Of a stretch of 64,000 nt of DNA, positions 1 through 50,074 are shown piece by piece; position 1 is the first letter of the stretch; every line of letters begins with the position of its first letter. The notes under the pieces were generated by a model that searched no databases, was not told the origin of the DNA, and saw only the letters and a program-made list of their open reading frames with translations. The position numbers and the translations under genes are program-made. The DNA is taken from the sequence record LR756500.1. One strand, given 5' to 3'.

Positions 1-460
1 CCAAGTCTTTAGATGTACTAGCGTCAATTATTTTTCTTTCTAAATATAATCTTATTTGATTATCCATTAATACACTATCTAAAGCTACTAATAATTGTTG
101 CCTACTTCTTTCAGGCCCTATATCATCAAATCTTTGAAGCAATCTCATACTAGTTACTTTTTCTTTGAAAGGTCTTATTTGTTTTGTATAATATAACAAA
201 GTAACTTCTAATTTATTTTCATCTTTGTTTCCTTCTTTTTCTTTTGCTTTTCTTAAAACTTCATCAAATTCTTTTTGCGATGCAGTTCCTTTAACAGTAT
301 TAGGAGTTCTAAATGAGTTACTTGATTTTGATTTATTTTTATCATTAGAAGTGTTTTTAAACTTATTCGCATATTCGGGTGGAATATAACGTCCACTATA
401 TCTTATTTTTTCATCATCTGCTTCTAATAAAAATTCTTCGTATTCTAAAATGTATTTCAT
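1..460 (-). CDS. Hypothetical protein with N-terminal capsid-targeting-like tag (partial, runs off window start)
   Basis: Manual translation from ATG at 460: MKYILEYEEFLLEADDEKIRYSGRYIPPEYANKF..., open to the window edge; not in the ORF track. Confidence 0.75.
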   Translation of the reverse strand, partial: MKYILEYEEFLLEADDEKIRYSGRYIPPEYANKFKNTSNDKNKSKSSNSFRTPNTVKGTASQKEFDEVLRKAKEKEGNKDENKLEVTLLYYTKQIRPFKEKVTSMRLLQRFDDIGPERSRQQLLVALDSVLMDNQIRLYLERKIIDASTSKDL

Positions 461-515: not shown

Positions 516-1517
516 ATGAAGTTTATATTAGAGTATGAAGAATTTTTGTTTGAGAATACTAGATATGTAGATGCTGAAAAAGACTTTTTAAAAACTAAAA
601 GAATAGATAAAAAGACTTGGGATTATTTAATAACAAATATAAGTAATAAATATGTTTATTGGGCTGTAAGAGAGTATGTTTTAAATAAAGAAAATAATAG
701 AATTGGTAATAAATTAGAAGATTATGTTAATATATCACGAATGTATGATATCAAAGGAAATACATTTGCTAAAAATGAAAGAGATTTATATAATTTTTCA
801 GATTTTAATAAAAATAACGATTATACATTTAATAAAGTAAAAGATTTATATAATATTAATAACAGTTTAAAAATCAAACCAAAAGATATATTTAAAACTA
901 GAACAGATTTAGTTGAAATAGGAAGTAATATTTTATATGAAGATAAAGAAGGTAATATTGTAGTTGAAGCATTAAATAGAGCTGCTGATTTATATTGGGG
1001 AAGTTGGTATAAAAAAAGAGAAGGTGCATTAGTTATAGATAACTGTATGACAAGTGAACCTTCATCTGATATAAAATATTTAAAAGATGTTCCAGAGGGT
1101 GGTAGACTTTATATTATATTACCTAAAGAACCGATAATTATATTAAGAAGATTATTTATAATGGAATATGAAGATGCATGGGGATTCGTAGGTCATCAAG
1201 ATTTTTCGATTGAAGAAACTAGTTATAAAAATATGTTAATTAAAAAATATCATGCTTTATATAAAGAATTAAATAAAAAATTAAATTATAAAAATGAAGA
1301 ATTATATAATATAATTAAAAGACTTTTTGAGTTAGATAGTAAACATGTAATCTATGATTACATTTATAATGGTTATAATGAATTAGATATTAATATAGAA
1401 TTTAATGAATTTATTAAACAATTAAACAATAATTTTAATCATATACCATCATATATGTCAGAGTATTTTATAGAATTATATAATTATTATCATGGATTAA
1501 CTAATAAAATAGTTTAA
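516..1517 (+). CDS. Hypothetical protein with CTS-like N-terminal tag
   Basis: 333 aa ORF starting MKFILEYEEFLFE; ATATATA motif upstream at about 490. Confidence 0.7.
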   Translation: MKFILEYEEFLFENTRYVDAEKDFLKTKRIDKKTWDYLITNISNKYVYWAVREYVLNKENNRIGNKLEDYVNISRMYDIKGNTFAKNERDLYNFSDFNKNNDYTFNKVKDLYNINNSLKIKPKDIFKTRTDLVEIGSNILYEDKEGNIVVEALNRAADLYWGSWYKKREGALVIDNCMTSEPSSDIKYLKDVPEGGRLYIILPKEPIIILRRLFIMEYEDAWGFVGHQDFSIEETSYKNMLIKKYHALYKELNKKLNYKNEELYNIIKRLFELDSKHVIYDYIYNGYNELDINIEFNEFIKQLNNNFNHIPSYMSEYFIELYNYYHGLTNKIV

Positions 1518-1616: not shown

Positions 1617-2633
1617 TTATTTTCTTTGTTTGTATTTATTTTTTATATAATCATTAATATCTTCTTCACTCATACCTTTACGTCTTAAAATATTTTTCAT
1701 AACATGTGTACGTTTTTCTTCTTTACTCATATTTTTTAAATTTACTGTTGGTGCTGGACCAGATTTAATTTGTTTATATTTAAATTTAATATAGTCGTTA
1801 ATCTCTTCATCACTTGCGCCTTTACGTCTTAAATGAGTTTTAATAGTAGATATATTGAAATTTGATCTTTCTTCATCATTAAGAGATGAAGAAAGATTAT
1901 TAAATTTACTCATAGTGTATTCATTATATTTTTTAACGACTTCTTTAGCCATATTTAATGTCGGTTCATTAGCTAACCAAACATATAAATTATGTTTGGT
2001 TTTAGAAAATTCATGCTTATCTATAACTTTAGAACTAAAATATTGTTCTACTTCTTTTAATGTTTTAGGATCTTTAGATAAAGAATATGAATCATAAAGC
2101 TTTAATATTTTAGTACATATAATATTAAATTTAGGACTTAAATTAAAAAATACACGGCTTGGATATGCATTACCATTGTTTTGTTCTATTTCTCTGTATA
2201 TAGTTTGGAGTGCAAGAAGTACCGCTTCTTCTTGCGATAATCCATCATATTTAGGAGATGTATCTTTAAGTATATTACGTCTATCTATAAAATCGCTAGA
2301 AAGTTCATTTAGTATTTTTTCAGTTAATTCTTTAGTAGGGGCTTCATTTGTTTTTAAAGAATATAATGGTTTATTAGGCACTAAATCGCTATTTAAAAAA
2401 TATTTAAATATTAAACGTAATATTGCAGCATAATTTTTAATATTTTCTTTTTTAAGAAACTCTATAGGTTTAAACTCTTCGTTACTTAAATAAATTTTAT
2501 TTGATTTTTTAAAAAGTTCATATATTTTGGTTAAACTTTTGTATAAATCATTTATATTTTGTTGTTTATTTTTTTCTTTACGACCTGTATTAGCTTCTAA
2601 TAAAAATTCTTCGTATTCTAAAATGTATTTCAT
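1617..2633 (-). CDS. Hypothetical protein with CTS-like tag and duplicated C-terminal motif
   Basis: Starts MKYILEYEEFLLE; C-terminus has two copies of LRRKGxSxExINDYIKxKYKQ. Confidence 0.7.
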   Translation of the reverse strand: MKYILEYEEFLLEANTGRKEKNKQQNINDLYKSLTKIYELFKKSNKIYLSNEEFKPIEFLKKENIKNYAAILRLIFKYFLNSDLVPNKPLYSLKTNEAPTKELTEKILNELSSDFIDRRNILKDTSPKYDGLSQEEAVLLALQTIYREIEQNNGNAYPSRVFFNLSPKFNIICTKILKLYDSYSLSKDPKTLKEVEQYFSSKVIDKHEFSKTKHNLYVWLANEPTLNMAKEVVKKYNEYTMSKFNNLSSSLNDEERSNFNISTIKTHLRRKGASDEEINDYIKFKYKQIKSGPAPTVNLKNMSKEEKRTHVMKNILRRKGMSEEDINDYIKNKYKQRK

Positions 2634-3013
2634 TTATTTAATTCATTTAAGTTAAAGTATCTAAACCCTCTAAATCCTTTCATAGGAATTGGCTCTATTT
2701 CATTAAATTGTCCTGATCTTTCTATAAATTTACCACTCCAATTTTTTCCTGTAGTAGAACATGTAAAAGATTTTTCCTTTATTCCTGTTATTTTCATCCA
2801 TCCCACAACATTACCATTATAATTTAGGTAACATTTATTTCCTACTATATCTTTTTTAGGAAGAAATGGAACTTTAAAATTTAAATTATTAGATCCATTT
2901 TTAACAGAATCTAATTCTTTTCTATATTCATTCCAATCTATATTAGAAGGTATAGTTATTATTATATCACTCTTATCAGTAACAACTTCTTCATATTCTT
3001 TTATATACTTCAT
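2630..3013 (-). CDS. Hypothetical protein with CTS-like tag (possibly ASCH/PUA-like beta fold)
   Basis: Starts MKYIKEYEE; motifs GNVVGWMKITG and PIPMKGFRGFRY; 4-nt overlap with the next gene; fold call tentative. Confidence 0.5.
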   Translation of the reverse strand: MKYIKEYEEVVTDKSDIIITIPSNIDWNEYRKELDSVKNGSNNLNFKVPFLPKKDIVGNKCYLNYNGNVVGWMKITGIKEKSFTCSTTGKNWSGKFIERSGQFNEIEPIPMKGFRGFRYFNLNELNK

Positions 3014-3027: not shown

Positions 3028-3660
3028 TTAGATAAATTTTATGTTTAAATATCTCAGTTCTGCTGCTTTAGCAAAATCTCTATCTGTTGATTTATCACCT
3101 ATTATTCTTGAATTAGCTTTATCTATTTTTCCATATTTTTCTATAGTTTTAGTAATAGCTCCTATATTAGGTTTTCTCATAGGATCGGTTCTTTTAGTTG
3201 TTATACTATAGAAATAATCTAATAATGGAATTCCTTTTGCTGCTAATGATTTTTTAATTTTATTCATTTTATATTTAAAATCATCTTCATTAACATATCC
3301 TGATTCAATTCCTCCCTGATTAGTTACAATAATTATTTTATAATTTTTTTTAACCATTATTTTTAAATATGCAATACAATTACTTTTTAATATCCAATCA
3401 TTTTTATCCTCTGAAAATGTTCCTCCTGATGCAGGTTCAATTAATGTATGATCTAAATCTACAAAAATATATTTATTACCAAAAATTTCAGTTCTTATAT
3501 CATCTTTATTTTCAGTATCATATGTTATTTCCTTTTGAATATCTAGAGTTTTTTCCTCTGCATCTTTCTTTATAATTTTTTTCTTTTTCTTTCTTCTAAA
3601 AAGTCTTTGAAAAAAATTATCTTCATTCAAAAAATCATCATATGTTTGTATATATTTCAT
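3028..3660 (-). CDS. HAD-family (subfamily IIIA) phosphatase, polynucleotide 3'-phosphatase/GmhB-like, with CTS-like tag
   Basis: HAD motifs FVDLDHTL, IVTNQGGI, RKPNIG, IGDKSTDRDFA; N-terminus MKYIQTYDDFLNE. Confidence 0.85.
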   Translation of the reverse strand: MKYIQTYDDFLNEDNFFQRLFRRKKKKKIIKKDAEEKTLDIQKEITYDTENKDDIRTEIFGNKYIFVDLDHTLIEPASGGTFSEDKNDWILKSNCIAYLKIMVKKNYKIIIVTNQGGIESGYVNEDDFKYKMNKIKKSLAAKGIPLLDYFYSITTKRTDPMRKPNIGAITKTIEKYGKIDKANSRIIGDKSTDRDFAKAAELRYLNIKFI

Positions 3661-3671: not shown

Positions 3672-3995
3672 TTAAGTTAATCCACTATGAATTTTATCAT
3701 ATATAGGTTTTTGTAAAATTTTCCAATTAATATCTGGATTCTTTTCTTTGATTTTATTTAAAATTTTATCTATTCTTTTATTTAATTCATTAGAAGGTTC
3801 ATCATTTTTCCAATAATCATCATTTAAAGAAACATTATATATTTTATCTGCTTGCATTTCATCTTCTTTAGTAACTACTATATTTTCATAATCTGGTATT
3901 AACTCTTTAGCATATTTTATAAATTTATCATTTTGTTCATTTAGTTCTTCGGAACTACATGCTATATACTCTTCATACTCTTTTATATACTTCAT
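3672..3995 (-). CDS. Hypothetical protein with CTS-like tag
   Basis: Starts MKYIKEYEEY. Confidence 0.65.
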   Translation of the reverse strand: MKYIKEYEEYIACSSEELNEQNDKFIKYAKELIPDYENIVVTKEDEMQADKIYNVSLNDDYWKNDEPSNELNKRIDKILNKIKEKNPDINWKILQKPIYDKIHSGLT

Positions 3996-3998: not shown

Positions 3999-5204
3999 CT
4001 ATAATTTTATTATATCAAATTCAAAATTCAATCCAGCATCTAAACAAGCTTTTCTTTTCAATTCATTAACTTCTTTATTCTTATTATACGTATATACACT
4101 CTTTACTTCAATTATCTTATTCTCACTAACTATATAAATATCTGGATAATAACGATGCTCTTTACCATCAATTGTAATATATATTACTTTCCCTATATAT
4201 CTTTCAATATCTTTATTCTCAATCATTATATCACTCTCATCATATCCCATCTCAAACAATTTATCCAATGCTTGTGGTTCATAGCCCTGCACTCTAGTTA
4301 TTTTACCAGAAGGCAATTCGTAACCTTTAAATCTAAATGCATTCATCATTGCTCTTTCAAATATAACTAAATCTTTCATTTGATGATCTACTCCATATCT
4401 TTCAATTAATGTTTCTTTAATTTTTTCACGAATAATTGATGATTTAAATATCTGATCTACACCATATCTTTCAATTAATGTATTTTTTATTTTTTCTTTT
4501 ATTTCATCAATATTTAATTTTAATGAACAATCTACATTATATCTTTTCATTAGTGTTTCTTTTATTTTTTTAGTTATACCTTCCTTTTTATGTCCATAAA
4601 TTTTATCTTTAGTTTCATTACATTTATTTATAACTTCTTTTACTTTCCAATTATGATCAACTCCATGCTTTTCTAAATAATTTTTTTTATATACTTCTCT
4701 AACAGTATTTGATTCAAATGGAGTTTTAAAACCATATTTTTTAATATTTGTATTTTCAATTTTTTTTCGAAATTCAGGATGTTGAATTGGTGCCTCAACT
4801 CCATATTTTTCTAACATAGTTTTTTTATACTTTTTTGCCCTTTTAATATAATGATTAGGATCATTCTTTTTTGTATTAACTATCTCATTGTACATATTAC
4901 TATTAATTTTACAAATTTTACTACAATACTTTTGATATCCTAAAGCTCTTCCTTTAAATCCTAATTCATTTTCTTTACATATAGGACAAATTGAAATATT
5001 TTGTACNNNNNNNNNNNNNNNNNNNNNNNNTTGAGAAAATTTAAAATCTTTATCTTTAAAATACTTATTATGATATTCTAATATTATTTTGAACTCTTTA
5101 TTAAGATTTATTTCAAACCAGCTTTCAGCAGTATTAGCAGCTTTAGTTGCTTTTGAATAATAATATGACATTTTTTCTTCATCTAAAATTATTATACTTT
5201 CCAT
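3999..5204 (-). CDS. Putative free-standing homing endonuclease (CxxC zinc motif, KYGV repeats, C-terminal PD-(D/E)XK-like domain)
   Basis: CPIC...CSKIC, repeated KYGV(E/D) units, YYPDIYIVSENKIIEVKS; paralogous to 43257-44270; spans the N gap at 5007-5030. Confidence 0.7.
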   Translation of the reverse strand: MESIIILDEEKMSYYYSKATKAANTAESWFEINLNKEFKIILEYHNKYFKDKDFKFSQXXXXXXXXVQNISICPICKENELGFKGRALGYQKYCSKICKINSNMYNEIVNTKKNDPNHYIKRAKKYKKTMLEKYGVEAPIQHPEFRKKIENTNIKKYGFKTPFESNTVREVYKKNYLEKHGVDHNWKVKEVINKCNETKDKIYGHKKEGITKKIKETLMKRYNVDCSLKLNIDEIKEKIKNTLIERYGVDQIFKSSIIREKIKETLIERYGVDHQMKDLVIFERAMMNAFRFKGYELPSGKITRVQGYEPQALDKLFEMGYDESDIMIENKDIERYIGKVIYITIDGKEHRYYPDIYIVSENKIIEVKSVYTYNKNKEVNELKRKACLDAGLNFEFDIIKL

Positions 5205-5304: not shown

Positions 5305-5332
5305 AAGTCAATACTTTTAAAAATATTGACTT
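5305..5332 (-). terminator. Rho-independent terminator after the neck gene
   Basis: 9-bp stem aagtcaata/tattgactt followed by a T-run on the minus strand. Confidence 0.6.
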
Positions 5333-5372
5333 AAATTATCTGTTTATATAAAATATTATAACATATTGATTA

Positions 5373-6131: not shown

Positions 6132-6138
6132 AATAAAA

Positions 6139-6666
6139 TTAATTTAATATATTGTATAAGTTTTTAATTTTTGTTATTAATTCATTATTTGATTCTTCTA
6201 TTTTAAAATTTTCATTATAATGAGTTAATAAATCATATTTAATATCAAAATCAAAAGATTCATCATAAGATGCTTCTTTTTTTCTTTTCTTGGCCAGAGC
6301 GGCTATAGCAGCAGTACCTCCAACAACAGCAGCTCCAACACCTAATTTTTTCTTTAAACTCCAAGGTCTTTTAATATTTTTACCACTTTGTTTAACTAAA
6401 TTTTTAACTGCAGCTTTAGATTTCATTTTTCTATATTGTGCATTAGTCATTTTTTTACCATCAACATTGATCAATTCTTTACTTTGTTTTTTAATTTTAG
6501 TATTATCAAATAAACCTTCTTCTATAGTAGCATCTAAAAGTTTTTCAAATTCTACTTTATCTTCTGATTCATTATAAATATTAAATAATGAGTTAACAAA
6601 TAATTCTTCATCAACTATAATAGAATCTATTTCATTATAGTCATTTAAATCTAATAAGTATTTCAT
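6139..6666 (-). CDS. Hypothetical protein with CTS-like start and one Gly/Ala-rich hydrophobic segment
   Basis: Starts MKYLLDLNDYNE; LGVGAAVVGGTAAIAALA flanked by Lys clusters. Confidence 0.6.
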   Translation of the reverse strand: MKYLLDLNDYNEIDSIIVDEELFVNSLFNIYNESEDKVEFEKLLDATIEEGLFDNTKIKKQSKELINVDGKKMTNAQYRKMKSKAAVKNLVKQSGKNIKRPWSLKKKLGVGAAVVGGTAAIAALAKKRKKEASYDESFDFDIKYDLLTHYNENFKIEESNNELITKIKNLYNILN

Positions 6667-6667
6667 A

Positions 6668-6973
6668 TTATTGTATCGTTTGTTTTATTTTATCTATTGT
6701 TTTTTGTCCATTAGCTTTTATAAATTCTGCATTTTGTAATGCTTTTTCTTTTTCTTTTTGAGCTAATATATCAGCCTTTGCTTTAATTGCTAAAGCTTTT
6801 TCATTTCCTCTTTCTTTAGCTCTTGTTACTTTATCGTCTATAACTTGTTTAATTTTTTCGATATCTTGTTCATTTAGATTTTCTTCTTTAGAAAAAAATT
6901 CATCTATTTCCATATTTGATGTAATAAATTTTTCGTATATTACATGTTGTTCATAAGTTAAAAGTATTTTCAT
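6668..6973 (-). CDS. Hypothetical coiled-coil protein with CTS-like start
   Basis: Starts MKILLTYEQHVIYE. Confidence 0.55.
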   Translation of the reverse strand: MKILLTYEQHVIYEKFITSNMEIDEFFSKEENLNEQDIEKIKQVIDDKVTRAKERGNEKALAIKAKADILAQKEKEKALQNAEFIKANGQKTIDKIKQTIQ

Positions 6974-6975
6974 AA

Positions 6976-8283
6976 TTATATTTTTTTAAATTCTATTACA
7001 TCTGTTTCTGGTGATATTATAGCAAAGTTTCCAACAAAACCTTCTCTAAATATACCACCTTTCATTTCACCATTAAAGGTTCCTTTTTTACCATATACAT
7101 AAATATTATTAGCAGTACAGGTTTTTCCAAAATAACAATTATTAATTTTTGAATTTTTAATATCTGTTTCCATATAAAGTTTACAATCATCTAAAATTGA
7201 ATTATCTACTTTGCAATGGAATAATTCACAATTTGAAAGATTTCCTTCTATTGTACATTCAATTAAATCAACATTACTTATTTCGTGACAATTTGTTAAA
7301 TTTGCATTTCTTATTTGTATTTTTCCTTTATCAGAATCATAATTTATTTCACCTTGTTTTAATTGTGCTTCACATAATATTTTAAATATTCTATCTCTAA
7401 CATTTAAGTAATAAAGATTTGTTATTTTTGGATCATCCTGCATATCACAATAGAATTTAATTTTAGGAAATTCTGTAAATAAACCGTTTAAATCTTTATA
7501 TGCTCTAATTAATTTTAGATGTTTGTTAAAAATCATTTTTAATTCTTCTTTATTATCAGCAGAATATTCTTTGTTATTAACAGATCTAAATAATGATATT
7601 AAAGATTCATCTACAACTTTAATAATATCATCATATTTTTCATGATAATTTTTACCTCCTAAATATCTAAATTCTAAATAGCCTTTAATTAACTTAGTGA
7701 AATTAACTCCATAGTATTTAGTATGAGGCATTATAAAATTTTTAGGAGATATATTGTTAAAATCATAATCAGATTCTAAGAAATATTTATTTTGAGGTAT
7801 TATAAATTTTATAGACTTAGCATATACATTGCTTCTTCTTTTAGGAAATATTTCGTATACATATTCTTCATCAAATTCTAAAATGAATTTTAAAACATCC
7901 ATATGAGATAGAAAACCTTCTCCATACTTTTTAGAATCGAAAGAAACATTGTAATGAATACCACATCTATTAGTTGTATTTGCATTATCTTTAATATAGT
8001 CAAACGCTTTTCCTAATATTAATTTAGCTTCTATATATTTCATTGGGCCTGTAATTAATTCTAGAGTTTTTTCACCTCCAGAATAGTCAGGTTCCATTTT
8101 AAATGTTTTATCGTCAGGTTTAAAATCACTATGAGCTTTATCAAAATATTGAATTTTTTTACCTAAAATTTTCTGTAAAGTTTTTCTAGTTTCTTCAACA
8201 GATTGTTTAGGTATAAATTCAATCTCCCATCCAACTTTAGCTGAATGTAAAATATCATGGCTTGTTAAATCATCTAATTTCAT
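6976..8283 (-). CDS. Putative amidoligase (COOH-NH2 ligase type) with C-terminal beta-repeat region
   Basis: GWEIEF, EPDYSG, LELITGP, CGIHYNVSF, KYYGVNF, YLEFRYLGG motifs; Cys/Asn/Ile-periodic C-terminus. Confidence 0.75.
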   Translation of the reverse strand: MKLDDLTSHDILHSAKVGWEIEFIPKQSVEETRKTLQKILGKKIQYFDKAHSDFKPDDKTFKMEPDYSGGEKTLELITGPMKYIEAKLILGKAFDYIKDNANTTNRCGIHYNVSFDSKKYGEGFLSHMDVLKFILEFDEEYVYEIFPKRRSNVYAKSIKFIIPQNKYFLESDYDFNNISPKNFIMPHTKYYGVNFTKLIKGYLEFRYLGGKNYHEKYDDIIKVVDESLISLFRSVNNKEYSADNKEELKMIFNKHLKLIRAYKDLNGLFTEFPKIKFYCDMQDDPKITNLYYLNVRDRIFKILCEAQLKQGEINYDSDKGKIQIRNANLTNCHEISNVDLIECTIEGNLSNCELFHCKVDNSILDDCKLYMETDIKNSKINNCYFGKTCTANNIYVYGKKGTFNGEMKGGIFREGFVGNFAIISPETDVIEFKKI

Positions 8284-8330
8284 ATTATAGATTATAATTT
8301 AAATATATATTAAAAGGTCATAAATTTTTT

Positions 8331-8936
8331 ATGAAATATATTAAAGACTATAACNNNNNNNNNNNNNNNNNNNNNTTACCTGATGTAAATTTAAATCCAT
8401 TATATTTAGAAGCTAAAGAAAGTAAAAGATATAAAGAGTTAATTGAATTAGAAGTAAAAGATATATCTACATTACAACAATAAAAGAATGGTTCATTTCA
8501 ATTTTCTCCATTATTTAGAATCAAAGAAGTTCAAACATTAAAAGATAATCCTTTGGTTAAAAAGCAACCTAAAGAAAAAATTTTAGATTATGATTTAATT
8601 TTAAATAATGAATTTAATAAATTTGAAATTTTTCAATGTCGTAAAAAAAGTGTTAGATTAAAACATGGATCTGGAACATATGCAGGTTTAAATATTGGAA
8701 AAATTGGAAAAAAATATACTAACTATAATGATGCTTTGGAATTTATAATAAATACTATAAAAAAAGATAAAAAGAATGTTGAAGATATTGTAAAATATTG
8801 GAAACAAGAAATAAAAAATAATATGTCAGTTATTAGTATAGTTAGAAAAATATTTGAACTTGAATTTATTAAAAAATATTTTAATATACCAGATCATTTA
8901 ATTAATGCTGATGATTTTGGATTCTTAGATAATTAA
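8331..8936 (+). pseudogene. CTS-tagged hypothetical gene with one in-frame TAA (8481-8483); pseudogene or consensus error
   Basis: ATG 8331 (MKYIKDYN) is in frame through the 21-nt N gap with track ORF 8553-8936; a single TAA interrupts; ends NADDFGFLDN. Confidence 0.55.
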
Positions 8937-8951
8937 AAATAAAATATTGAT

Positions 8952-9335
8952 ATGAAATACATAAAAGAGTATAGTGAATTTGTTAATGAATCAGTCGGAA
9001 CTCCATTGACATTATATACAGCAAGAGCTTCTAGTTATTTATCTCAACAATTAAAAATAGTTAAGGCTATTGAAGATAAAAAAACTCTTATGAATAAACC
9101 TAATACGGATAACGAAACACGAAAAACATTACAGGAGCATATAGCAGTCTTAAAAGAAAAGGAGGAAAAGATTAAACTGAATCTTGATAAGGCTATAGAA
9201 AAAGCTAGTGAAAAAGTTAAAAAATTACCACAAGCTAAAAGAAATGCTTTAATGAAAATGGGAGAATCTGAAAAAGAAAAGGTTGATAAAATTAAAGAAC
9301 AAATAATAGAGCTAAAACAAATAAAGAGGAATTAA
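8952..9335 (+). CDS. Hypothetical coiled-coil protein with CTS-like tag
   Basis: Starts MKYIKEYSEFVNES. Confidence 0.7.
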   Translation: MKYIKEYSEFVNESVGTPLTLYTARASSYLSQQLKIVKAIEDKKTLMNKPNTDNETRKTLQEHIAVLKEKEEKIKLNLDKAIEKASEKVKKLPQAKRNALMKMGESEKEKVDKIKEQIIELKQIKRN

Positions 9336-9349
9336 TTCCTCTTTATTTT

Positions 9350-9547
9350 TTAATTTTGTGACTCATCTTTAAATACAGGCCATTGAGCTCCATCTATTCG
9401 CATTTTTAAATAAGTAATATGTTCCTTTAACATTTGATTAATTAATTCTAATTCTTGAAATTTATTACTTAAATGTTCATAGCCTTTTTCAACAACTAAT
9501 AAACGCATTTCTAATCCTTTAATATGTTTAATATCCATTTCACTCAT
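9350..9547 (-). CDS. Small hypothetical coiled-coil protein
   Basis: 65 aa ORF tightly packed after S1. Confidence 0.55.
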   Translation of the reverse strand: MSEMDIKHIKGLEMRLLVVEKGYEHLSNKFQELELINQMLKEHITYLKMRIDGAQWPVFKDESQN

Positions 9548-40294: not shown

Positions 40295-41773
40295 TTACAA
40301 ATTTTTGACCTTATGTAAAATTTCTTCAACTTTTTCTGGTCCAAATAATGTTATAAAGGTTTCTCCAGTTATTTCAGCTTTAGATTTCTCTTTTTTGCCT
40401 TCAGTTAAAGCAATATGTTGCTTAAATGATTCTGCTGCTACTTCAATATCCTCAGGGGTAAGTTTTGAACTTTTTCCTCCTTCACGATACATAGCATACA
40501 TTTTAGCTTTGTTAATTACTTCTGTTGCAAAAGCTGGAACAATACCTGATAATGATTTTGCAGCTATTGAATAATCTTTATCTTGATAGATGATTGATTT
40601 ACCTTCAGCATTTCTTGCGAATTTTTTAATAAATTCTAAAGCTGTATCTTCATCAAGTGCACCCATTAAAATTAAACTGTCGATACGACCGGCACGTAAA
40701 AATGCTTTATTGATATTCTCAAGATGATTTGTTGTAAGAATAGTAATGATTGGTTTATCTTTAGTATCCATTCCATCAAGTGTATTAAGAATGTCATTGA
40801 TAGCTGCTGTTCTTGTTCCTTCTGTTGCTTTATCGATATCTTCGGCAAATATTACAGCAGGAGCGTACATTTCAGCAAGTCTTAATGCATTTTTTAATTG
40901 AGAGCATTGTTCTAAATAAATAAAAGTCCAATTATTTTCAACTGCAATTTTTGATGTTCCTCTTGCTAAGAAAGTTTTTCCGGTACCATAAGGTCCTGCA
41001 AGAAGACAACCATGTTTTAATGGAATTTTATTTTTGATACATTCGTCAGTTCTTTGAATTCTCAATAATACAGATGAAAAATCTTTTCTTGCTGTTTTAG
41101 TTAAAAGAATATCTTCCCATTTAACTTTAGATACATCAATAAAATTTGGATTTGGTGGAAAAACATTTGTATTCTCCATAAAACTTAAATCAACTTTAAA
41201 AGCTTTTCCTTTATAGATACTTTCTTCAGCTAAAATTCTTTGAGTTTCGTCAGCAATTTTTTGAGTAACTTCTTCGAATTTTCTTTTAATTTTTCCGGAA
41301 ATTTTAAATTCCATTGTTGCATTATTGTATTTAGTTTCAAGATATGAATCGCTATCCATACCAGGAAATTGCATACGTCCCCAAGGAACTTTAATATGTG
41401 AACCATCAGGAAGTTTAATGTCAATCATTTCAGGTGGTTCAGCTCCTGAAGGACCATTAACTGAAGTTAAATCGGCAAATCCAAATAAGTTAGTAATTGC
41501 TTTGTACATAGCATACGCTCCATCAAATGGATATGCTTTCATAGAAGCATTAAAATTAACTTGCTGTTCTTCTGATTCTTCTTTTCTTTTCAACCATTTA
41601 CGAGCATCGTCATATCCCATGCCTTCTGGAAGAATAATTTTAGTACCAGAGCGAACAATGTCAACGGATTTAAACTCTACTTTTTTGCTTCCGCCTTTTC
41701 CTAAAATTTCATCATAAAGTTCTTGATGAACTCCAAAAGGTTTTTCTTTTGTTTTTTCGAGTGTGTCATTCAT
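40295..41773 (-). CDS. AAA+ ATPase (classical AAA clade, no protease domain)
   Basis: Walker A GPYGTGKT, Walker B IFAEDID, SRH TTNHLENINKAFLRAGRID. Confidence 0.9.
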   Translation of the reverse strand: MNDTLEKTKEKPFGVHQELYDEILGKGGSKKVEFKSVDIVRSGTKIILPEGMGYDDARKWLKRKEESEEQQVNFNASMKAYPFDGAYAMYKAITNLFGFADLTSVNGPSGAEPPEMIDIKLPDGSHIKVPWGRMQFPGMDSDSYLETKYNNATMEFKISGKIKRKFEEVTQKIADETQRILAEESIYKGKAFKVDLSFMENTNVFPPNPNFIDVSKVKWEDILLTKTARKDFSSVLLRIQRTDECIKNKIPLKHGCLLAGPYGTGKTFLARGTSKIAVENNWTFIYLEQCSQLKNALRLAEMYAPAVIFAEDIDKATEGTRTAAINDILNTLDGMDTKDKPIITILTTNHLENINKAFLRAGRIDSLILMGALDEDTALEFIKKFARNAEGKSIIYQDKDYSIAAKSLSGIVPAFATEVINKAKMYAMYREGGKSSKLTPEDIEVAAESFKQHIALTEGKKEKSKAEITGETFITLFGPEKVEEILHKVKNL

Positions 41774-41784
41774 AAAAATAAAAA

Positions 41785-42063
41785 TTAAGTGTTTAATAAA
41801 ATACTACATTGTGTTATAATTTGTTTTAATTCTTGTTCTGTTCCTTCTAAACATGCTATTTTAATTGTATTATTAATAGAATTAAGTATTTCGCATTTAT
41901 CGCTTTGTTTTATTCCAAAATAATATGTACAATAATTACCTTTGTCTTTATCTATCCAAGATTTAGCTTGTGAATATGTACCAATAACATTTTTGCAATG
42001 TATTAATACATCATTTTGTATTTTTCGTAATTCAATAGGATATCCAGCAAATGTTAAATTCAT
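41785..42063 (-). CDS. Hypothetical protein
   Basis: 92 aa ORF packed between ligA-C and the ATPase. Confidence 0.55.
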   Translation of the reverse strand: MNLTFAGYPIELRKIQNDVLIHCKNVIGTYSQAKSWIDKDKGNYCTYYFGIKQSDKCEILNSINNTIKIACLEGTEQELKQIITQCSILLNT

Positions 42064-42064
42064 A

Positions 42065-43255
42065 TTAAAATAAACTTACTTGGTTATACTTAGTATTTGA
42101 TTTTTCTTGCTGCTTAGTATTAGATTGTTTTGTATTTGATTCATTATTAGAACCTCCCATTAATTTAATTAATGATGGATCTTTAATAACATTTTTTAGA
42201 AAATCTTCATATGTCATTACCTGAATTTTACTTCCTTTCTTTTTAAGAGATTCAGCTTTAACCATTTTCGTTGAACCAGAATCCATAGATGCAGTTAATA
42301 AATATGCACTATTTTCATCTAATTTATCTTGTACATATCCATAACTTTTTAAGTAATCAAACCAATCGTTTTTATGCTTTAAATGTCCAATAACGGGAGG
42401 TGTTCCAGTCATTTCAATTGCAATAAGTGATCCATCTACTTCTTGCGGATATTCTACAGTAATGAAATTATCCTTTAATAAAGATAAAAATCTCATTACA
42501 CGTTGATATTGATTTGAATTTTTATCAGTTAATTGTGAAATAGCTTCTTTATTTAAATGATTAAAATCATATTCTATACCTGCAATATAATTAGCTAATT
42601 GTTCCGAAACAGAAGAACCGGTATCCTTAAACTTTAGTGATTCAATCACTTGTTTAAGGGATACCGTATCGACTGAATTGACACCATCGATTATTACTTC
42701 TAATGCTCTTCCGTTTACGAATTTTCCACTTCTTACTAATGATATTTTATTAAATTTCTTTTTATCGAAATAATCTTCAACTGTTTTAATTCCAGCTGCA
42801 TATAAATCTTTAACAGCTGACATTCCAACATCTTTAAAACCGAATATTTTAACAGCAGCTTCTATTTTCTTCAACACTTGTGCAGGACATTCAGGATTAA
42901 TACACCATAAATGTTTATCATCTTCTGTCAATAATTCTCCGCATGATGGACAATTTGTGGGTAGGTTTGTTTTTAAAGTCGATTTAATTACAACTTTATA
43001 AATTTGAGGAATAATATCTCCAGCTTTAGCTACTAACACTTGAGCTCCAGGCCATGCTCCCATTTTATCTATTCTGTCTTTATTAAATAAAGTTGCTCTC
43101 TGAACAGTTGTACCATCTAATTCAATAGGTTTCATTATTGCTGTAGGTACAACTTCACCAGTAGTTCCAGTATTCCATTCTATATCTATAATTGTTGTTA
43201 TAGCATCTTTTGGGGGAAACTTTATTGCAATTGCCCAGAGTGCTGTTTTTTTCAT
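42065..43255 (-). CDS. ligA: NAD-dependent DNA ligase, C-terminal part (motif V, OB fold, Zn finger, HhH, BRCT-like)
   Basis: WAIAIKFP, TGEVVPTAIMKPIELDGTTVQRATL, GDIIPQI, CPSC...CINPEC, BRCT-like EMTG... Confidence 0.9.
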   Translation of the reverse strand: MKKTALWAIAIKFPPKDAITTIIDIEWNTGTTGEVVPTAIMKPIELDGTTVQRATLFNKDRIDKMGAWPGAQVLVAKAGDIIPQIYKVVIKSTLKTNLPTNCPSCGELLTEDDKHLWCINPECPAQVLKKIEAAVKIFGFKDVGMSAVKDLYAAGIKTVEDYFDKKKFNKISLVRSGKFVNGRALEVIIDGVNSVDTVSLKQVIESLKFKDTGSSVSEQLANYIAGIEYDFNHLNKEAISQLTDKNSNQYQRVMRFLSLLKDNFITVEYPQEVDGSLIAIEMTGTPPVIGHLKHKNDWFDYLKSYGYVQDKLDENSAYLLTASMDSGSTKMVKAESLKKKGSKIQVMTYEDFLKNVIKDPSLIKLMGGSNNESNTKQSNTKQQEKSNTKYNQVSLF

Positions 43256-43256
43256 A

Positions 43257-44270
43257 TTAAAATATTAAAAATTCAAAATTTAAACCTTGTTTAATACATG
43301 CATCTCTTTTTAAATAAATAACATCAGCATGTAATTTAATACTCCAATTAGATTTAACTTCTACTATTTTATTTTCAGATTTAATATAAATATCTGGAAA
43401 ATAGCGATGTTTAGAACCATCTAATTTATAATAATAAATTCTTCCTATTTCATTTTCTATATCTATTGCTTTTATACATATATCAGATTCTATATAACCA
43501 TCTTTAAATAATTTATCTAAAGCTTTATTTTCATAACCTTGAATTTTAATAATACTTCCAGATGGTAAAGTATATGATTTATATTGTAGTGTTTTATTCA
43601 TTACTTTCATATATTGATCACTATTTTGCATTGGATGGTCTGTTCCATATTTTTCTTTCCATTTTTTAAGTATTTTAATTCTTACTTCTGGAATCCACAT
43701 ACCATTATTTACACCATATCTATTTAATAAAGTATTTTTAATTTTATTTTGTACTTCTGGTATTTGACTTGCATTTTCAACTCCATATAGTTTTAAATAT
43801 GTATTTTTAATTTTGTCTCTAATTTCCTTTGATTTCCATTGATGATCTACATTATATAATTTTAAACATGTTTTACGTGATGATTCTAAAATTTTATTTT
43901 GTACAACTTTACTTTTTCTAGGATTATCAACTCCAAATTTTTTAATACAAGTATTTCTAACTGTTTCTCTAAATTCATATGAACTACTTGAACATTTTCT
44001 TGAACAAAATTTTCTATAATTTCTATTTTTTAAACAAAAACTATTAACTGGTTTTTTACATTCTTTACATATAGGAATATCATAAATATTATTGATTATA
44101 TGCCATACTCTATGATAAATACTTATTCTTTTAAATTTATCATTTAAAAAATTAGTTTCATTTAAAATAGAATTATACATATTTTTATATTTATTTTGTT
44201 TAGTTACTTTATCTAAAATATTAGAATTAAACAATTCCATTATAATTATTAAATCTTCTTGTGTTATCAT
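43257..44270 (-). CDS. Putative homing endonuclease inserted in ligA
   Basis: CKEC...CSRKC, KYGV repeats, YFPDIYIKSENKIVEVKS; paralogue of 3999-5204. Confidence 0.75.
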   Translation of the reverse strand: MITQEDLIIIMELFNSNILDKVTKQNKYKNMYNSILNETNFLNDKFKRISIYHRVWHIINNIYDIPICKECKKPVNSFCLKNRNYRKFCSRKCSSSSYEFRETVRNTCIKKFGVDNPRKSKVVQNKILESSRKTCLKLYNVDHQWKSKEIRDKIKNTYLKLYGVENASQIPEVQNKIKNTLLNRYGVNNGMWIPEVRIKILKKWKEKYGTDHPMQNSDQYMKVMNKTLQYKSYTLPSGSIIKIQGYENKALDKLFKDGYIESDICIKAIDIENEIGRIYYYKLDGSKHRYFPDIYIKSENKIVEVKSNWSIKLHADVIYLKRDACIKQGLNFEFLIF

Positions 44271-44296
44271 GATATATTTTTATTTTATATATCATG
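44268..44296 (-). promoter_or_regulatory. Perfect 10-bp hairpin covering the endonuclease start codon
   Basis: catgatatat (44268-44277) pairs with atatatcatg (44287-44296); the ATG is at 44270-44268. Confidence 0.7.
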
Positions 44297-44328
44297 AAAA
44301 TTTTATAGTAATTACCCATACCAATAAT

Positions 44329-45177
44329 TTATCTAAATCCTATAGTATTTCTATACTTTTCATCTCCTTTTATTACCATTCCATCTAATTGAAATGGTGA
44401 ATATTTTTCTCTATATTCTTCAAATTCATCATAAATTTTCTTAAATTCTTTAATATCGTTAAAATATTTGACATAAATAGGATATTCTTTATTAAAACCT
44501 AAATTTGTTAAAATATCTATAGTTTTATTTTTTAGTGGAAATTCAAAACTATTACCTTTATGAATTCTTAATTCGTAAGCAACAAAAACTAAATCTTTTA
44601 TAATATCTTTATTAATTTCATCTCTAGATAATATTCCAGCTACAAAATTTCTAGCATTTTTAAATTTTTTAGCATATTTTTTATCAAATATTTTTATAGG
44701 TATAACTACTTCTCCTCTAACTTCAATTTTTTCTTGAATTGAAATTTTGTTAGGAACTATAAAAAGCATTTTACTTTTTTGATCAAATCCATTTTCACCG
44801 TCTCCTCTTGTTAAAGCATTTTCTAAAATTCCGTATTCATATACAAGATTCATAGAATTTCCATCAAATTTAGGAGTTACTTCAAATTCATAAACTCCTT
44901 TTGATTTAATATTTAATGACCAGTTATCAAATTCAGATATTACTTTTTGCATGTCATTACTATCATAAACACTTAATTTACCTAAAGTTCCCATTGGAGA
45001 TGGATGAAGAAATTTTCCAGCTTTAACTGATCCAACAATAAAAGGAACAGTTGAACCGGCTTCTTTTAATTTTTCTTCTAAAATATCAAACTCTGCATCA
45101 GTCATTATAGGATTACCTGCATAGTAAGTATCTTTAGCTTTTAAATATAATGTTTCTTTATCTTTTAAATTAAGCAT
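44329..45177 (-). CDS. ligA: NAD-dependent DNA ligase, N-terminal adenylation part
   Basis: YYAGNPIMTDAEFD, motif I PKFDG, ALTRGDG, EVRGEV, RNFVAG, motif IV LDGMVIK; stops at IGFR. Confidence 0.9.
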   Translation of the reverse strand: MLNLKDKETLYLKAKDTYYAGNPIMTDAEFDILEEKLKEAGSTVPFIVGSVKAGKFLHPSPMGTLGKLSVYDSNDMQKVISEFDNWSLNIKSKGVYEFEVTPKFDGNSMNLVYEYGILENALTRGDGENGFDQKSKMLFIVPNKISIQEKIEVRGEVVIPIKIFDKKYAKKFKNARNFVAGILSRDEINKDIIKDLVFVAYELRIHKGNSFEFPLKNKTIDILTNLGFNKEYPIYVKYFNDIKEFKKIYDEFEEYREKYSPFQLDGMVIKGDEKYRNTIGFR

Positions 45178-45185
45178 ATTCTAAA

Positions 45186-45680
45186 TTATTGTTTAAACAT
45201 TTTTATAATACTATCTGTAGGCATATTATAGATTAAATTTATTAAATAATCTTTTCTTGATTTTAAATCTTCAAAAATAAAATCTCCAAAATAAATTTGT
45301 ATAAGTGTTATATCTTCGTTACGATTTAAATCAATTAAAGAATTATTTTTAAATATTTCCATTTTAGAAGAGTTCAAATAATCTTTTAAATAAAAATTTG
45401 ATTTATATGCATTTGAGTATAATGATTCTTTAATAATCAATACAACATCATTTCCTGAATACAAAAAAGTATTATATTTTTTAATTGTATAAACAGCTTC
45501 AAATGGAATTTTTATTGTTGATGCATCTTTACTTTTAATATTTAAAGTATCACTTATAATACCAAACATATAAATATTTTCTATTCTATTATTTACTGTT
45601 GTTTCATGCGAATATTCATATATAAGTACTCCAACTATTATAAGAACTAATAAAATACATAAATATAAAAGATATTTCAT
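45186..45680 (-). CDS. Hypothetical membrane-anchored protein
   Basis: N-terminal hydrophobic helix LLYLCILLVLIIVGVLIY. Confidence 0.55.
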   Translation of the reverse strand: MKYLLYLCILLVLIIVGVLIYEYSHETTVNNRIENIYMFGIISDTLNIKSKDASTIKIPFEAVYTIKKYNTFLYSGNDVVLIIKESLYSNAYKSNFYLKDYLNSSKMEIFKNNSLIDLNRNEDITLIQIYFGDFIFEDLKSRKDYLINLIYNMPTDSIIKMFKQ

Positions 45681-45697
45681 TTAATTAAAATTTATAT

Positions 45698-45715
45698 GTA
45701 AATATAATAATAAAG
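45698..45715 (-). promoter_or_regulatory. Candidate early promoter CTTTATTATTATATTTAC (identical at 59388-59405, 17/18 at 52963-52980)
   Basis: Repeated 18-mer 17-26 nt upstream of minus-strand ATGs; TATATTTA resembles the Bacteroidota -7 element TAnnTTTG. Confidence 0.55.
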
Positions 45716-45750
45716 GACCTAAAATAAAACTATATAAACATTTATTTATG

Positions 45751-46188
45751 TTAGACATTATTTTCTATTAATTCATCTAATTTTTTACAATAATTATCAT
45801 ACCAAATCTTAACATCTTCTCTATGTTTGTTTACTAATTCATTATAAGCCTCTCTGCAATCATATTCACTCTTAAATAATTTAAGATCATATTCTGTTCT
45901 ATGATTAAATGTTAATTGTTTACTAACTATTTTCCCTCTTTTACCAATTGCATTTAAATTTGAATTTTGACGTAATGCATGAAAATTATTAATAGATTTA
46001 AATCTAGCAAGATTAGTTTGCCAACTATCATTTTTAATTTTTATAATAACTTCAGTCGGTTTTATATGTGTATCTGCTGAAGATTTTTGTTGTCGTTTTG
46101 AATATTCGCAAATCCAACAAATAAATTGACCATCAATATCGTTATTAAAAAAATCTTTAATTTCGTCAAAAGTAATTAATCCATTCAT
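45751..46188 (-). CDS. Hypothetical protein
   Basis: 145 aa ORF. Confidence 0.55.
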   Translation of the reverse strand: MNGLITFDEIKDFFNNDIDGQFICWICEYSKRQQKSSADTHIKPTEVIIKIKNDSWQTNLARFKSINNFHALRQNSNLNAIGKRGKIVSKQLTFNHRTEYDLKLFKSEYDCREAYNELVNKHREDVKIWYDNYCKKLDELIENNV

Positions 46189-48724: not shown

Positions 48725-50074
48725 TTAAGAATTAGCATCATATTCAGGATTAATATATTTAACAGAAATAGTATTTTCATATTTACTACGAATTACAATA
48801 CCTTCTATAATTTGATTCGTATTCTCTTTTATTTCTTTAAAATAATTATTACATTTTGCAATTAAAGTATCATAATCAAAAATACCTTCAAATAATTCTG
48901 ATGTATATTCAAAATTATATTTTTCACAAAAGTCTTTTAAATTATGAGATTGTCCGTAATGAATTCTAGTTGAATGTCCAGATGATAAATCATCTATACC
49001 AAAGAAAATAACTTTAGATTCCGATAATTTTGCATCAATATTTAATTTATTTCCAGATCCTTTATTTCCAGCACCTATTAATTCTCCTCTAAGTGCTAAT
49101 TGAACATTATTTTCTTTACAATATTCTAAAAGTTTATCTAAATATCCATATTTTTTTGTTGTATCTACCCATGAATCTCTAACTTCTGTTAATATAGATT
49201 CAAATTTAATTGAAGCTTCATCATTTGTAAAAAATTCATTTGTAATATCATTCATCCAACCTTTTGTAAATTTTTCTTTATCAAAGTGCTGTCTTAGTAT
49301 AACTCCATCTTCTGTTTTATATCCAGTAACTATTTCTTGATCAAGTTTCTTTTCTTGATTTCTAGTGCATATACCTACTAAATATTCTTCCGGATTTATT
49401 GGATTTTTTCTACAATATAAAGTAATAGAAGATCCATCTCGTTTAATGGTTCCACTAACTATAACAGATTTTTCAAAGGATTTGTTAATATGTTCTTTTA
49501 ACATTTCTAATCTTGATTCATCAGTTTTATACATAAAAGAAGGAAAATCTCCCTTCTGCAATCCGCTATTTTGTGAACCTTCTAATGAATCATCAGCAAC
49601 ATATTTTGTTATATTTAGTTCTGTTTGTAAATCAAAATTTTCAGGTAATTCATTAATTAAATTAACTGGTAATACAATATGAATTGGTAAAATTATACCA
49701 TTACTATATATCGGATCAGTATTATTTTCAAATCTAAAATTGAATTTTAATGCTCTTATACGACCCTTTTTACCTAGACGAGATTTTTTTAAATCTCCAC
49801 CTGGTCTCCAATATTCTTTAAATATATCGGTATCAGGAATACAATAATCAGGTTGAATATAAACAACTTTTTCACCTATTTCATAAAGTCCTTTTCCAAC
49901 AATAATATTAAATTCACAACTATTGCCGTCAGTATCTTTAACTCTAGCAACTTGTATCATATTTGCTTCAATTCCTTCTTTAAATATAGGAATTAATTTT
50001 TCAATAATAACAAAATCTACAGGTTTCATAACATTTAAAATAAAAAATAGTAAATAAGAATAGGTATAATACAA
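48725..50074 (-). CDS. ATP-dependent RNA ligase (DRB0094-like, N-terminal OB-like module); true start probably MKPVDF
   Basis: Motif I TIKRDGSS, LRGELIG, EGIVIR, VKYIN. Confidence 0.8.
   Translation of the reverse strand: MYYTYSYLLFFILNVMKPVDFVIIEKLIPIFKEGIEANMIQVARVKDTDGNSCEFNIIVGKGLYEIGEKVVYIQPDYCIPDTDIFKEYWRPGGDLKKSRLGKKGRIRALKFNFRFENNTDPIYSNGIILPIHIVLPVNLINELPENFDLQTELNITKYVADDSLEGSQNSGLQKGDFPSFMYKTDESRLEMLKEHINKSFEKSVIVSGTIKRDGSSITLYCRKNPINPEEYLVGICTRNQEKKLDQEIVTGYKTEDGVILRQHFDKEKFTKGWMNDITNEFFTNDEASIKFESILTEVRDSWVDTTKKYGYLDKLLEYCKENNVQLALRGELIGAGNKGSGNKLNIDAKLSESKVIFFGIDDLSSGHSTRIHYGQSHNLKDFCEKYNFEYTSELFEGIFDYDTLIAKCNNYFKEIKENTNQIIEGIVIRSKYENTISVKYINPEYDANS

What the first reader, a model, noticed from the sequence alone, without database searches (positions are those of the whole stretch)
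42065..45177. NAD-dependent DNA ligase split into two genes by a homing endonuclease, with no room for an intron
Seen: ligA stops after motif IV (DGMVIK...IGFR-stop) and resumes as a new ORF with its own ATG (MKKTALWAIAIKFP, motif V). Between them are only 58 nt, the endonuclease ORF and 1 nt, too little for a group I/II intron core, and there is no intein. Both halves keep all recognisable motifs. Established: Aeromonas phage Aeh1 nrdA is split by mobE and works as a two-chain enzyme. Inference: a naturally split, two-subunit LigA in which catalytic motif V is supplied in trans.
Basis: partly seen in the sequence, partly recalled or inferred. Interest (0 to 1): 0.8.

Follow-up and report, generated by a model that had tools for sequence, protein, structure and literature searches.

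The report
Phage DNA ligase gene split by endonuclease
In an uncultured 462-kb groundwater phage, a mobile endonuclease gene sits inside the catalytic domain of the only DNA ligase gene, leaving two intact genes that most likely make a two-chain ligase, a new example of a known kind of gene splitting.

Summary
On the minus strand lie LigA-N (45177..44329, 282 aa, ends after motif IV), a 58-nt spacer, a 337-aa endonuclease gene (44270..43257), one base, then LigA-C (43255..42065, 396 aa, starts just before motif V). The three ORFs use three different frames.

No intron RNA family matches even at E<=10, and there is no room for an intein. All close relatives are continuous across this point, so the endonuclease gene is an insertion.

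The endonuclease is a DUF7487 protein with a PD-(D/E)xK nuclease domain. Its start codon lies in a hairpin that recurs at two other endonuclease genes of this phage.

The ligase halves show no decay: 110 of 116 family-conserved positions are kept and the branch is short. This is the only DNA ligase found in the phage. A complex prediction puts the motif V strand of LigA-C beside the motif IV strand and active-site lysine of LigA-N (score 0.81, best control 0.00).

Function as a two-chain enzyme is inferred, not shown. A recently broken gene remains possible.

Precedents exist: Aeh1 nrdA/mobE, T4 39/60, and T5 ligA/ligB, which is split at another site. I file this as a new member of a known kind, with moderate interest.

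The parts
44329..45177 (-). LigA-N, 282 aa: domain Ia plus nucleotidyltransferase motifs I to IV. Ia motif YYAGNPIMTDAEFD at 18-31; KFDGNS with K103; TRGDG at 123-127; EVRGEV at 152-157; NARNFVAG; DGMVIK at 265-270. Ends IGFR-TAA.
44271..44328 (-). 58-nt spacer between the LigA-N stop and the endonuclease start; 15.5% G+C.
44264..44300 (-). Hairpin with 11 perfect pairs and a 9-nt loop. Its 3' arm contains the endonuclease start codon (44270-44268). The same palindrome recurs at the start codons of two other endonuclease genes elsewhere in the phage.
43257..44270 (-). Free-standing endonuclease gene, 337 aa, Pfam DUF7487. It has a Cys4 zinc ribbon (C68, C71, C89, C93), repeated helical KYGV modules, and a C-terminal PD-(D/E)xK nuclease domain (E247, D293, E304, K306).
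42065..43255 (-). LigA-C, 396 aa, with its own ATG one base after the endonuclease stop. It holds the motif V strand (AIAIKFP at 8-14, K12), the OB fold, the Cys4 zinc finger (C102, C105, C118, C123), the HhH region and a BRCT-like end.

Best explanation
A free-standing homing-type endonuclease gene (DUF7487 with a PD-(D/E)xK nuclease) inserted into the phage's only NAD-dependent DNA ligase gene. The insertion lies in the variable loop between the motif IV and motif V strands of the nucleotidyltransferase domain. It replaced about seven loop codons with FR-stop on one side and ATG-KKTAL on the other.

All three genes sit in one tightly packed minus-strand operon. LigA-N terminates at TAA. The endonuclease start codon lies in a hairpin that probably limits its translation. 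LigA-C starts at its own ATG, by independent initiation without a Shine-Dalgarno sequence (as in every other gene here) or by coupling to the endonuclease stop.

The two chains then assemble without covalent joining. The N-terminal strand of LigA-C (motif V, K12) pairs with the motif IV strand of LigA-N and completes the active site around K103. The OB, Zn, HhH and BRCT parts ride on LigA-C.

Shown: the anatomy, the insertion, the absence of intron and intein, and the intactness of both halves. Inferred: expression, assembly, activity, and homing by the endonuclease.
For: - Anatomy.
- Insertion: the sister P0183 (667 aa), P0002, L021-L023 and 70 further IMG/VR loci are continuous at this point.
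- No intron family at E<=10. The 3' two thirds of the insert shows no excess RNA structure, z about 0.
- No decay: 110 of 116 columns that are >=90% conserved are kept. The window has 6 departures, against a median of 2 and a maximum of 25 in intact relatives.
- Branch length: root-to-tip 1.005 against a median of 1.16; terminal branch 0.35 against 0.79 for the intact sister.
- Four of the six departures lie at the predicted interface around the cut (Fisher p = 0.012).
- Sole ligase: no second LigA piece and no ATP-dependent DNA ligase (TIGR00574) in the 462-kb record. The nearby nucleotidyltransferase is an RNA ligase.
- Start context is ordinary: 0 of 63 genes have a Shine-Dalgarno sequence, and 1-5 nt gaps between genes are common.
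- Complex prediction of LigA-N with LigA-C 1-100: ipSAE 0.81, best of 3 controls 0.00. That mark was reached by 51 of 78 solved complexes and 2 of 108 mismatched pairs. Runs agree in at least 58% of contacts; partner pLDDT is at least 72. C residues 2-15 touch N 264-271 and K103.
- Endonuclease fold: TnsA Z 8.5, Vsr 5.9, I-Bth0305I 5.2, with invariant E, D, E-x-K residues.
- Precedents of working HEG-split enzymes.
Against: - There are no RNA or protein data. The only runs that hold the sequence are DNA metagenomes from one study.
- The split at this site was found only in this phage lineage, and no sequence variants exist: each 90% cluster has one member. Persistence under selection after the insertion therefore cannot be measured, and intactness may only mean the insertion is recent.
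- The complex score may reflect the model's memory of intact LigA structures.
- Two residues that are nearly invariant in the family just before motif V (H and P) are lost, and the invariant Ser of the MLSL motif is Thr.
- An in-frame start within the nine open codons before the conserved Trp has a chance probability of roughly 15-30% in DNA of this composition (my estimate).
- Host LigA could cover the phage's needs.
Confidence: 0.6

Rival explanations
1. Recently inactivated gene. The endonuclease insertion killed the ligase, the two ORFs are still intact only because too little time has passed, and the phage relies on the host's LigA.
For: The split is unique to one lineage and has no variants. 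The family-conserved H and P before motif V are lost, and the invariant Ser64 position is changed. There are no expression data.
Against: The branch is shorter than that of the intact sister, and the number of lost conserved sites is within the range of intact relatives. The cut falls exactly in a variable surface loop with no residues missing. A usable start codon lies in an ordinary context. There is no other DNA ligase in a 462-kb genome. Comparable splits are known to work.
Confidence: 0.25
2. A cryptic self-splicing intron. The endonuclease ORF lies in a group I or group II intron whose core overlaps the ORF, and splicing restores one LigA reading frame.
For: Formally, a U (end of GGA TTT) and a G (of the ATG) sit where an in-frame join IGF-KKTALW could be made (read). 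The 5' end of the insert shows some excess predicted structure, z -2 to -3.8.
Against: No intron family matches at E<=10 over 41500-45800, and none at gathering score in the whole window. Only 58 nt and 1 nt lie outside the ORF. The 3' 700 nt of the insert has z about 0. The 5' structure is explained by a hairpin shared with other endonuclease genes that are not inside genes. The stop and start codons sit exactly at the borders of homology.
Confidence: 0.05
3. Protein-level or translational repair: a split intein, or ribosomal bypass of the insert.
For: None found.
Against: The three ORFs are in three frames, with stops. All residues of both halves align to LigA, leaving no intein blocks. The insert is 1.07 kb, whereas the T4 gene 60 bypass gap cited in the abstract listed is 50 nt.
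Confidence: 0.02
4. Assembly artefact that joins unrelated pieces.
For: The sequence comes from a metagenome.
Against: The stretch is identical in LR756500.1, in a 429-kb IMG/VR record and in a 17.5-kb Logan contig. Fragments from a second sample cross the endonuclease/LigA-C joint without a mismatch. The exact LigA-N protein is on six contigs.
Confidence: 0.01

Closest known systems
Aeromonas phage Aeh1 nrdA-a / mobE / nrdA-b (Friedrich 2007; Crona 2011, PMC3045599)
   Same: A free-standing endonuclease gene is inserted in a functionally critical part of an enzyme gene. No intron or intein is present. Two polypeptides reassemble a fragmented active site, and new terminal residues were created by the insertion. 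A hairpin at the endonuclease start is reported for Aeh1 mobE.
   Different: The enzyme is an NAD-dependent ligase, not a ribonucleotide reductase. The endonuclease is DUF7487 with a PD-(D/E)xK nuclease, not HNH. The new termini here are only 2 and 6 residues. Activity has been shown for Aeh1 and not here.
Phage T5 NAD-dependent DNA ligase subunits A and B (T5.116 ligA 323 aa, T5.117 ligB 259 aa)
   Same: A phage LigA encoded by two adjacent genes. The same type is seen in metagenomic relatives and in locus L024, where small ORFs lie between the halves.
   Different: T5 is cut between domains (after the OB fold, before Zn/HhH/BRCT), so the whole catalytic core is on one chain. T5 has no endonuclease gene in its 200-nt gap, which carries promoters. 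Here the cut is inside the nucleotidyltransferase domain, and motif V is on the other chain.
T4 topoisomerase genes 39/60 with mobA, and phage 25 DNA polymerase 43A/43B with a seg-like gene
   Same: Replication enzymes split into two genes at a homing-endonuclease insertion; the polymerase halves co-purify and are active.
   Different: Different enzymes and different endonuclease families. In phage 25, the origin of the split by the endonuclease is uncertain.
Intron-encoded homing endonucleases of T4 (td/I-TevI and others)
   Same: An endonuclease gene lies inside a conserved gene next to sequence coding for a catalytic motif, with translational control by a hairpin over the start region.
   Different: No ribozyme is detectable here. 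The flanking pieces have their own stop and start codons.

Membership tests
NAD-dependent DNA ligase LigA (TIGR00575) | Domain Ia and nucleotidyltransferase motifs I, III, IIIa, IV and V, with the active-site Lys in KxDG | tested here: met
   All motifs are present but divided: Ia and motifs I-IV (K103) on LigA-N, motif V (K12) on LigA-C.
NAD-dependent DNA ligase LigA (TIGR00575) | OB fold, Cys4 zinc finger, HhH and BRCT in order after the catalytic domain | tested here: met
   LigA-C matches profile positions 292-553 and phrog_3869 positions 295-654 of 656. Four Cys lie at 102, 105, 118 and 123.
NAD-dependent DNA ligase LigA (TIGR00575) | One polypeptide scoring above the curated cut-off (444.45 bits) | tested here: not met
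   The two pieces score 128.8 and 167.6 bits, each below the cut-off, and so is their sum. By this rule it is a fragmented member, not an equivalog.
Free-standing homing endonuclease | A nuclease domain of a known homing-endonuclease fold, with catalytic residues | tested here: met
   AF2 model pLDDT 93. Residues 217-337 match TnsA (Z 8.5), Vsr (5.9) and I-Bth0305I (5.2). E247, D293, E304 and K306 are invariant in 35 homologues. The Foldseek PDB search alone was not significant.
Free-standing homing endonuclease | Present in some and absent from other alleles of the same conserved site | tested here: met
   Every relative examined is continuous at this site. Homologues sit free-standing beside conserved phage genes.
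Free-standing homing endonuclease | Cleaves the endonuclease-less allele near the insertion site and spreads by gene conversion | not testable with these tools
   This needs a cleavage assay on an intact allele and co-infection crosses.
Group I / group II intron | Conserved ribozyme core flanking or overlapping the ORF | tested here: not met
   No Rfam intron match at E<=10. Only 58 nt and 1 nt lie outside the ORF. There is no excess structure in the 3' 700 nt.
Intein | In-frame insertion with splicing blocks and no stops | tested here: not met
   Three frames, a TAA after LigA-N, and a TAA before the LigA-C ATG.
HEG-split two-chain enzyme (Aeh1 NrdA type) | Both fragments are intact ORFs with their own stop and start, and no decay | tested here: met
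HEG-split two-chain enzyme (Aeh1 NrdA type) | The fragments bind each other | tested here: inconclusive
   The prediction passes (0.81 against 0.00) but may reflect likeness to solved intact LigA.
HEG-split two-chain enzyme (Aeh1 NrdA type) | Enzymatic activity requires both fragments | not testable with these tools
   Biochemistry or complementation is needed.

The most novel reading that the evidence does not exclude
This is a working two-chain NAD-dependent DNA ligase whose nucleotidyltransferase domain is completed in trans by strand complementation, with the motif V lysine on one chain and the adenylated lysine plus motifs I-IV on the other. That would be the first natural ligase split inside its catalytic domain. 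The local changes at the interface (MLSL to MGTL, new termini) would be adaptations to the split. The shared hairpin would be a common control element of several unrelated endonuclease genes in this phage.
Probability: 0.5. Interest if true: 0.6.

Novelty: new member of a known kind. Interest (0 to 1): 0.45.

Why it matters
If the two chains work together, the case adds a covalent nucleotidyltransferase to the short list of enzymes known to survive fragmentation by a mobile endonuclease. It would show that the LigA catalytic domain tolerates a break between motifs IV and V, which is useful for split-ligase design and for understanding domain assembly. It would also tie the uncharacterised DUF7487 family to homing-type behaviour. 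If the gene is simply broken, it is an ordinary snapshot of an endonuclease invasion.

Tried and rejected
- **Intron:** cmscan at E<=10 over the locus, cmscan at gathering score over the window, and a sliding-window fold scan. Nothing found.
- **Intein or bypass:** rejected on the reading frames and the size of the insert.
- **Alternative genetic code:** rejected. Stops in 63 genes are TAA 56, TGA 5, TAG 2, and the LigA-N stop is TAA.
- **Search for an endonuclease-less allele or RNA:** the four runs that hold the stretch are all groundwater DNA from one study. No bridging contig without the insert was found. The two listed joints have sides of only 21 and 31 letters and look like repeats.
- **Same split elsewhere:** hits of LigA-N size are contig-end truncations or NTase+OB proteins. 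Hits of LigA-C size are truncations (P0242, P0264) or a chimera (P0280). Of 80 IMG/VR loci, only a T5-type split (L024) turned up.
- **dN/dS after the split:** not possible, because no variants within 90% identity exist.
- **Literature:** no paper mentions DUF7487 or LR756500, and none describes a ligase gene split by a homing endonuclease.
- **Foldseek against the PDB for the endonuclease:** only weak hits to PA-type endonucleases. The VIA search was clearer.
- **15-nt direct repeat** (43507-43521 and 44323-44337): judged compatible with chance in AT-rich DNA.
Full report
**What is there.** The window is part of GenBank LR756500.1, an unannotated 462,018-bp uncultured phage genome. It comes from groundwater metagenomes. 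Window position equals record position minus 314,060.

All features lie on the minus strand:

| Feature | Coordinates | Size | Notes |
|---|---|---|---|
| LigA-N | 45177..44329 | 282 aa | ends ...DGMVIK...IGFR-TAA |
| Spacer | 44328..44271 | 58 nt | 15.5% G+C |
| Endonuclease ORF | 44270..43257 | 337 aa | ends TAA |
| Single base | 43256 | 1 nt | |
| LigA-C | 43255..42065 | 396 aa | starts MKKTALWAIAIKFPP |

LigA-N matches the LigA model TIGR00575 over positions 6-288 (E 2e-37). LigA-C matches positions 292-553 (E 4e-49). The phage ligase family phrog_3869 is covered over 8-292 and 295-654 of 656 positions. The three ORFs are in three different frames, and a TAA lies four codons upstream of the LigA-C ATG.

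**It is an insertion into a formerly continuous gene.**
- The nearest relatives are continuous across the point. P0002 reads ...SIGNTDHHPKWAIAIKYPP, and the 667-aa sister P0183 reads ...MGVTGHHPKWALAIKFPP. The IMG/VR loci L021-L023 are continuous too.
- In the alignment the window has one extra residue at the cut and none missing.
- By the PDB alignments, the cut corresponds to about residues 302/303 of E. coli LigA. That is a dozen residues before the end of the nucleotidyltransferase domain.
- At the DNA level, homology stops after ATA GGA and resumes at TGG GC. About seven loop codons were replaced by TTT AGA TAA on one side and ATG AAA AAA ACA GCA CTC on the other.
- The 42 nt after the cut, which code for motif V, are 83% identical to P0002 by my count. 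Overall protein identity between the two is about 54-62%. The insert therefore sits beside the best-conserved DNA of the gene, as homing endonuclease genes typically do (general knowledge).

**No RNA or protein splicing.**
- Rfam finds no group I or II intron in 41500-45800 even at E<=10, and nothing at gathering score in the whole window.
- Only 58 nt and 1 nt lie outside the ORF.
- In a sliding fold scan, the 3' 700 nt of the insert shows no excess structure (z about 0). The excess at its 5' end (z -2 to -3.8) is explained by a hairpin described below.
- An intein or translational bypass is excluded by the frames, the stops and the 1.07-kb size.
- The genetic code is standard: stops are TAA 56, TGA 5, TAG 2 in 63 genes.

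**The inserted gene.**
- It carries Pfam DUF7487, a large, unnamed metagenomic family: 224 hits at E<=1e-5.
- An alignment of 35 members shows four conserved Cys, repeated KYGV modules, and invariant Q244-G-Y-E247, D293 and E304-x-K306.
- The AlphaFold model (pLDDT 93) places residues 217-337 in the restriction-endonuclease fold. Matches are TnsA (Z 8.5, 120 residues aligned), Vsr (5.9), VRR-NUC, FAN1, and the homing endonuclease I-Bth0305I (5.2). Foldseek alone was not significant.
- The phage holds about ten paralogues. One is free-standing at window 5204..3999.
- A homologue in another huge phage sits between the terminase gene, a TnpB gene and the sheath gene.
- This is the behaviour of a free-standing homing endonuclease. 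Cleavage and homing themselves are untested.

**A shared hairpin.**
- The endonuclease start codon lies in the 3' arm of a perfect 11-bp hairpin at 44264-44300. This pattern is not expected by chance in the window: 0 of 100 shuffles contain it.
- The same palindrome occurs twice more in the genome. Each copy is at the start of another endonuclease gene, and both genes lie in a tRNA cluster. One gene is a GIY-YIG type (phrog_314, E 1e-36). The other is a 232-aa PD-(D/E)xK-like protein (phrog_15427 and phrog_15137).
- In T4 and Aeh1, hairpins over the start region restrict translation of I-TevI to I-TevIII, SegB and MobE. I infer the same role here. This is an inference.

**Is the split ligase alive?**

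Evidence for:
1. Both ORFs are intact in a 25% G+C genome.
2. Of 116 alignment columns that are at least 90% conserved in 76 intact relatives, the window keeps 110. Intact relatives themselves miss a median of 2 and up to 25.
3. In a maximum-likelihood tree, the split copy has one of the shortest root-to-tip distances (1.005; rank 10 of 77; median 1.16). Its terminal branch (0.35) is shorter than that of its intact sister (0.79; clade support 0.99).
4. All catalytic motifs, the zinc-finger cysteines and the domain Ia motif are present.
5. It is the only DNA ligase in the record. There is no other LigA piece and no hit to TIGR00574 at E<=1. The neighbouring nucleotidyltransferase at 50074..48725 is an RNA ligase.
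6. The LigA-C start looks like every other start here. None of 63 genes has a Shine-Dalgarno sequence, and gaps of 1-5 nt between genes are common.
7. The complex test of LigA-N with LigA-C 1-100 gave a score of 0.81, with the best of three controls at 0.00. That mark was reached by 51 of 78 solved complexes and 2 of 108 mismatched pairs. The runs agree in at least 58% of contacts, and partner pLDDT is at least 72. Residues 2-15 of LigA-C lie against 264-271 (the motif IV strand) and K103 of LigA-N. This reproduces the geometry of intact LigA and may come from the model's memory of it. It shows that the pieces fit, not that they bind.
8. Four of the six lost conserved residues lie at this predicted interface (Fisher p = 0.012). 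Two of the four are the replaced loop residues, and without them the excess is not significant.

Evidence against:
- There are no RNA or protein data.
- The split at this site was found in no other lineage, and no close variants exist. Selection after the insertion therefore cannot be measured.
- A start codon in the nine open codons before the conserved Trp is not very improbable by chance (my estimate, 15-30%).

I put the working two-chain enzyme at about 0.6, a recently broken gene at about 0.25, and an undetected intron at about 0.05.

**Comparison with what is known.**
- Gene fragmentation by free-standing homing endonucleases with reassembly of two polypeptides is established for Aeh1 NrdA (mobE). 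It has been described for T4 gp39/gp60 (mobA) and phage 25 gp43A/B.
- Two-gene NAD-dependent ligases are already annotated in T5. There, ligA (323 aa) and ligB (259 aa) are separated by 200 nt carrying promoters. PHROGs has separate families for the two T5-type pieces.
- Many metagenomic relatives of this very ligase consist of NTase+OB only. Locus L024 has small ORFs between T5-type halves.
- All of those cuts lie between domains. What is different here is the position inside the catalytic domain, which puts the motif V lysine on a different chain from the adenylated lysine. The endonuclease family also differs.
- I therefore file it as a new member of a known kind, of moderate interest.

The masked N run inside the paralogous endonuclease gene (window about 5000) was left untouched.

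Noticed in passing
window 42600-42720 (- strand), inside LigA-C: A very stable predicted RNA structure lies inside the coding sequence of LigA-C (residues about 179-219): -44.2 kcal/mol, z = -7.2, 0 of 200 shuffles as stable. The homologous stretch of the intact sister gene (L117) is unstructured at -12.3 kcal/mol, z = +1.05. It is lineage-specific and its function is unknown.
   Followed up: partly
window 44264-44300; L044 2420-2445 and 3377-3401 (G001 348919 and 349876): The same 25-27-nt palindrome (ATGATATAT, A/T loop, ATATATCAT) sits at the start codons of three unrelated endonuclease genes: DUF7487, GIY-YIG and a 232-aa PD-(D/E)xK-like protein. It may be a common control element for mobile endonuclease genes in this phage.
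   Followed up: partly
window 1-9400, both strands: At least nine otherwise unrelated ORFs begin with nearly the same N-terminal motif, MKYI(L/K)EYEEF.. Examples are 460..2, 516..1517, 2633..1617, 3013..2630, 3660..3028, 3995..3672 and 8952..9335. This may be a shared targeting or packaging tag.
   Followed up: no
LR756500.1 about 183-193 kb, 224 kb, 232 kb, 251 kb, 262 kb (loci L004-L011): About eight further ORFs of 538-656 aa share the DUF7487 repeat region but not the C-terminal nuclease of the ligase-borne gene. Four are clustered within 10 kb. It is not known whether they are endonucleases or split other genes.
   Followed up: no
L044 1443-3514 (G001 about 347.9-350.0 kb): Two endonuclease genes lie between tRNA-Asn and tRNA-Asp, as segB does in the T4 tRNA cluster. 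Between them is a tRNA-like 3' half (23.7 bits, below threshold) that seems to follow a long insertion.
   Followed up: partly
window 1-64000: None of 63 long ORFs has a Shine-Dalgarno-like motif upstream, and 56 of 63 stops are TAA. This suggests a host with initiation that does not use a Shine-Dalgarno sequence.
   Followed up: no
window 43507-43521 and 44323-44337: An exact 15-nt direct repeat. One copy is inside the endonuclease ORF and the other lies over the LigA-N stop codon. It is probably chance in AT-rich DNA, but it could be a trace of the insertion event.
   Followed up: no
L120 (GCA_902730705.1, 55.4-62.3 kb): In another huge phage, a DUF7487 endonuclease homologue lies next to a TnpB/IS605 OrfB gene, between the terminase and sheath genes. 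This looks like a hot spot for mobile elements.
   Followed up: no
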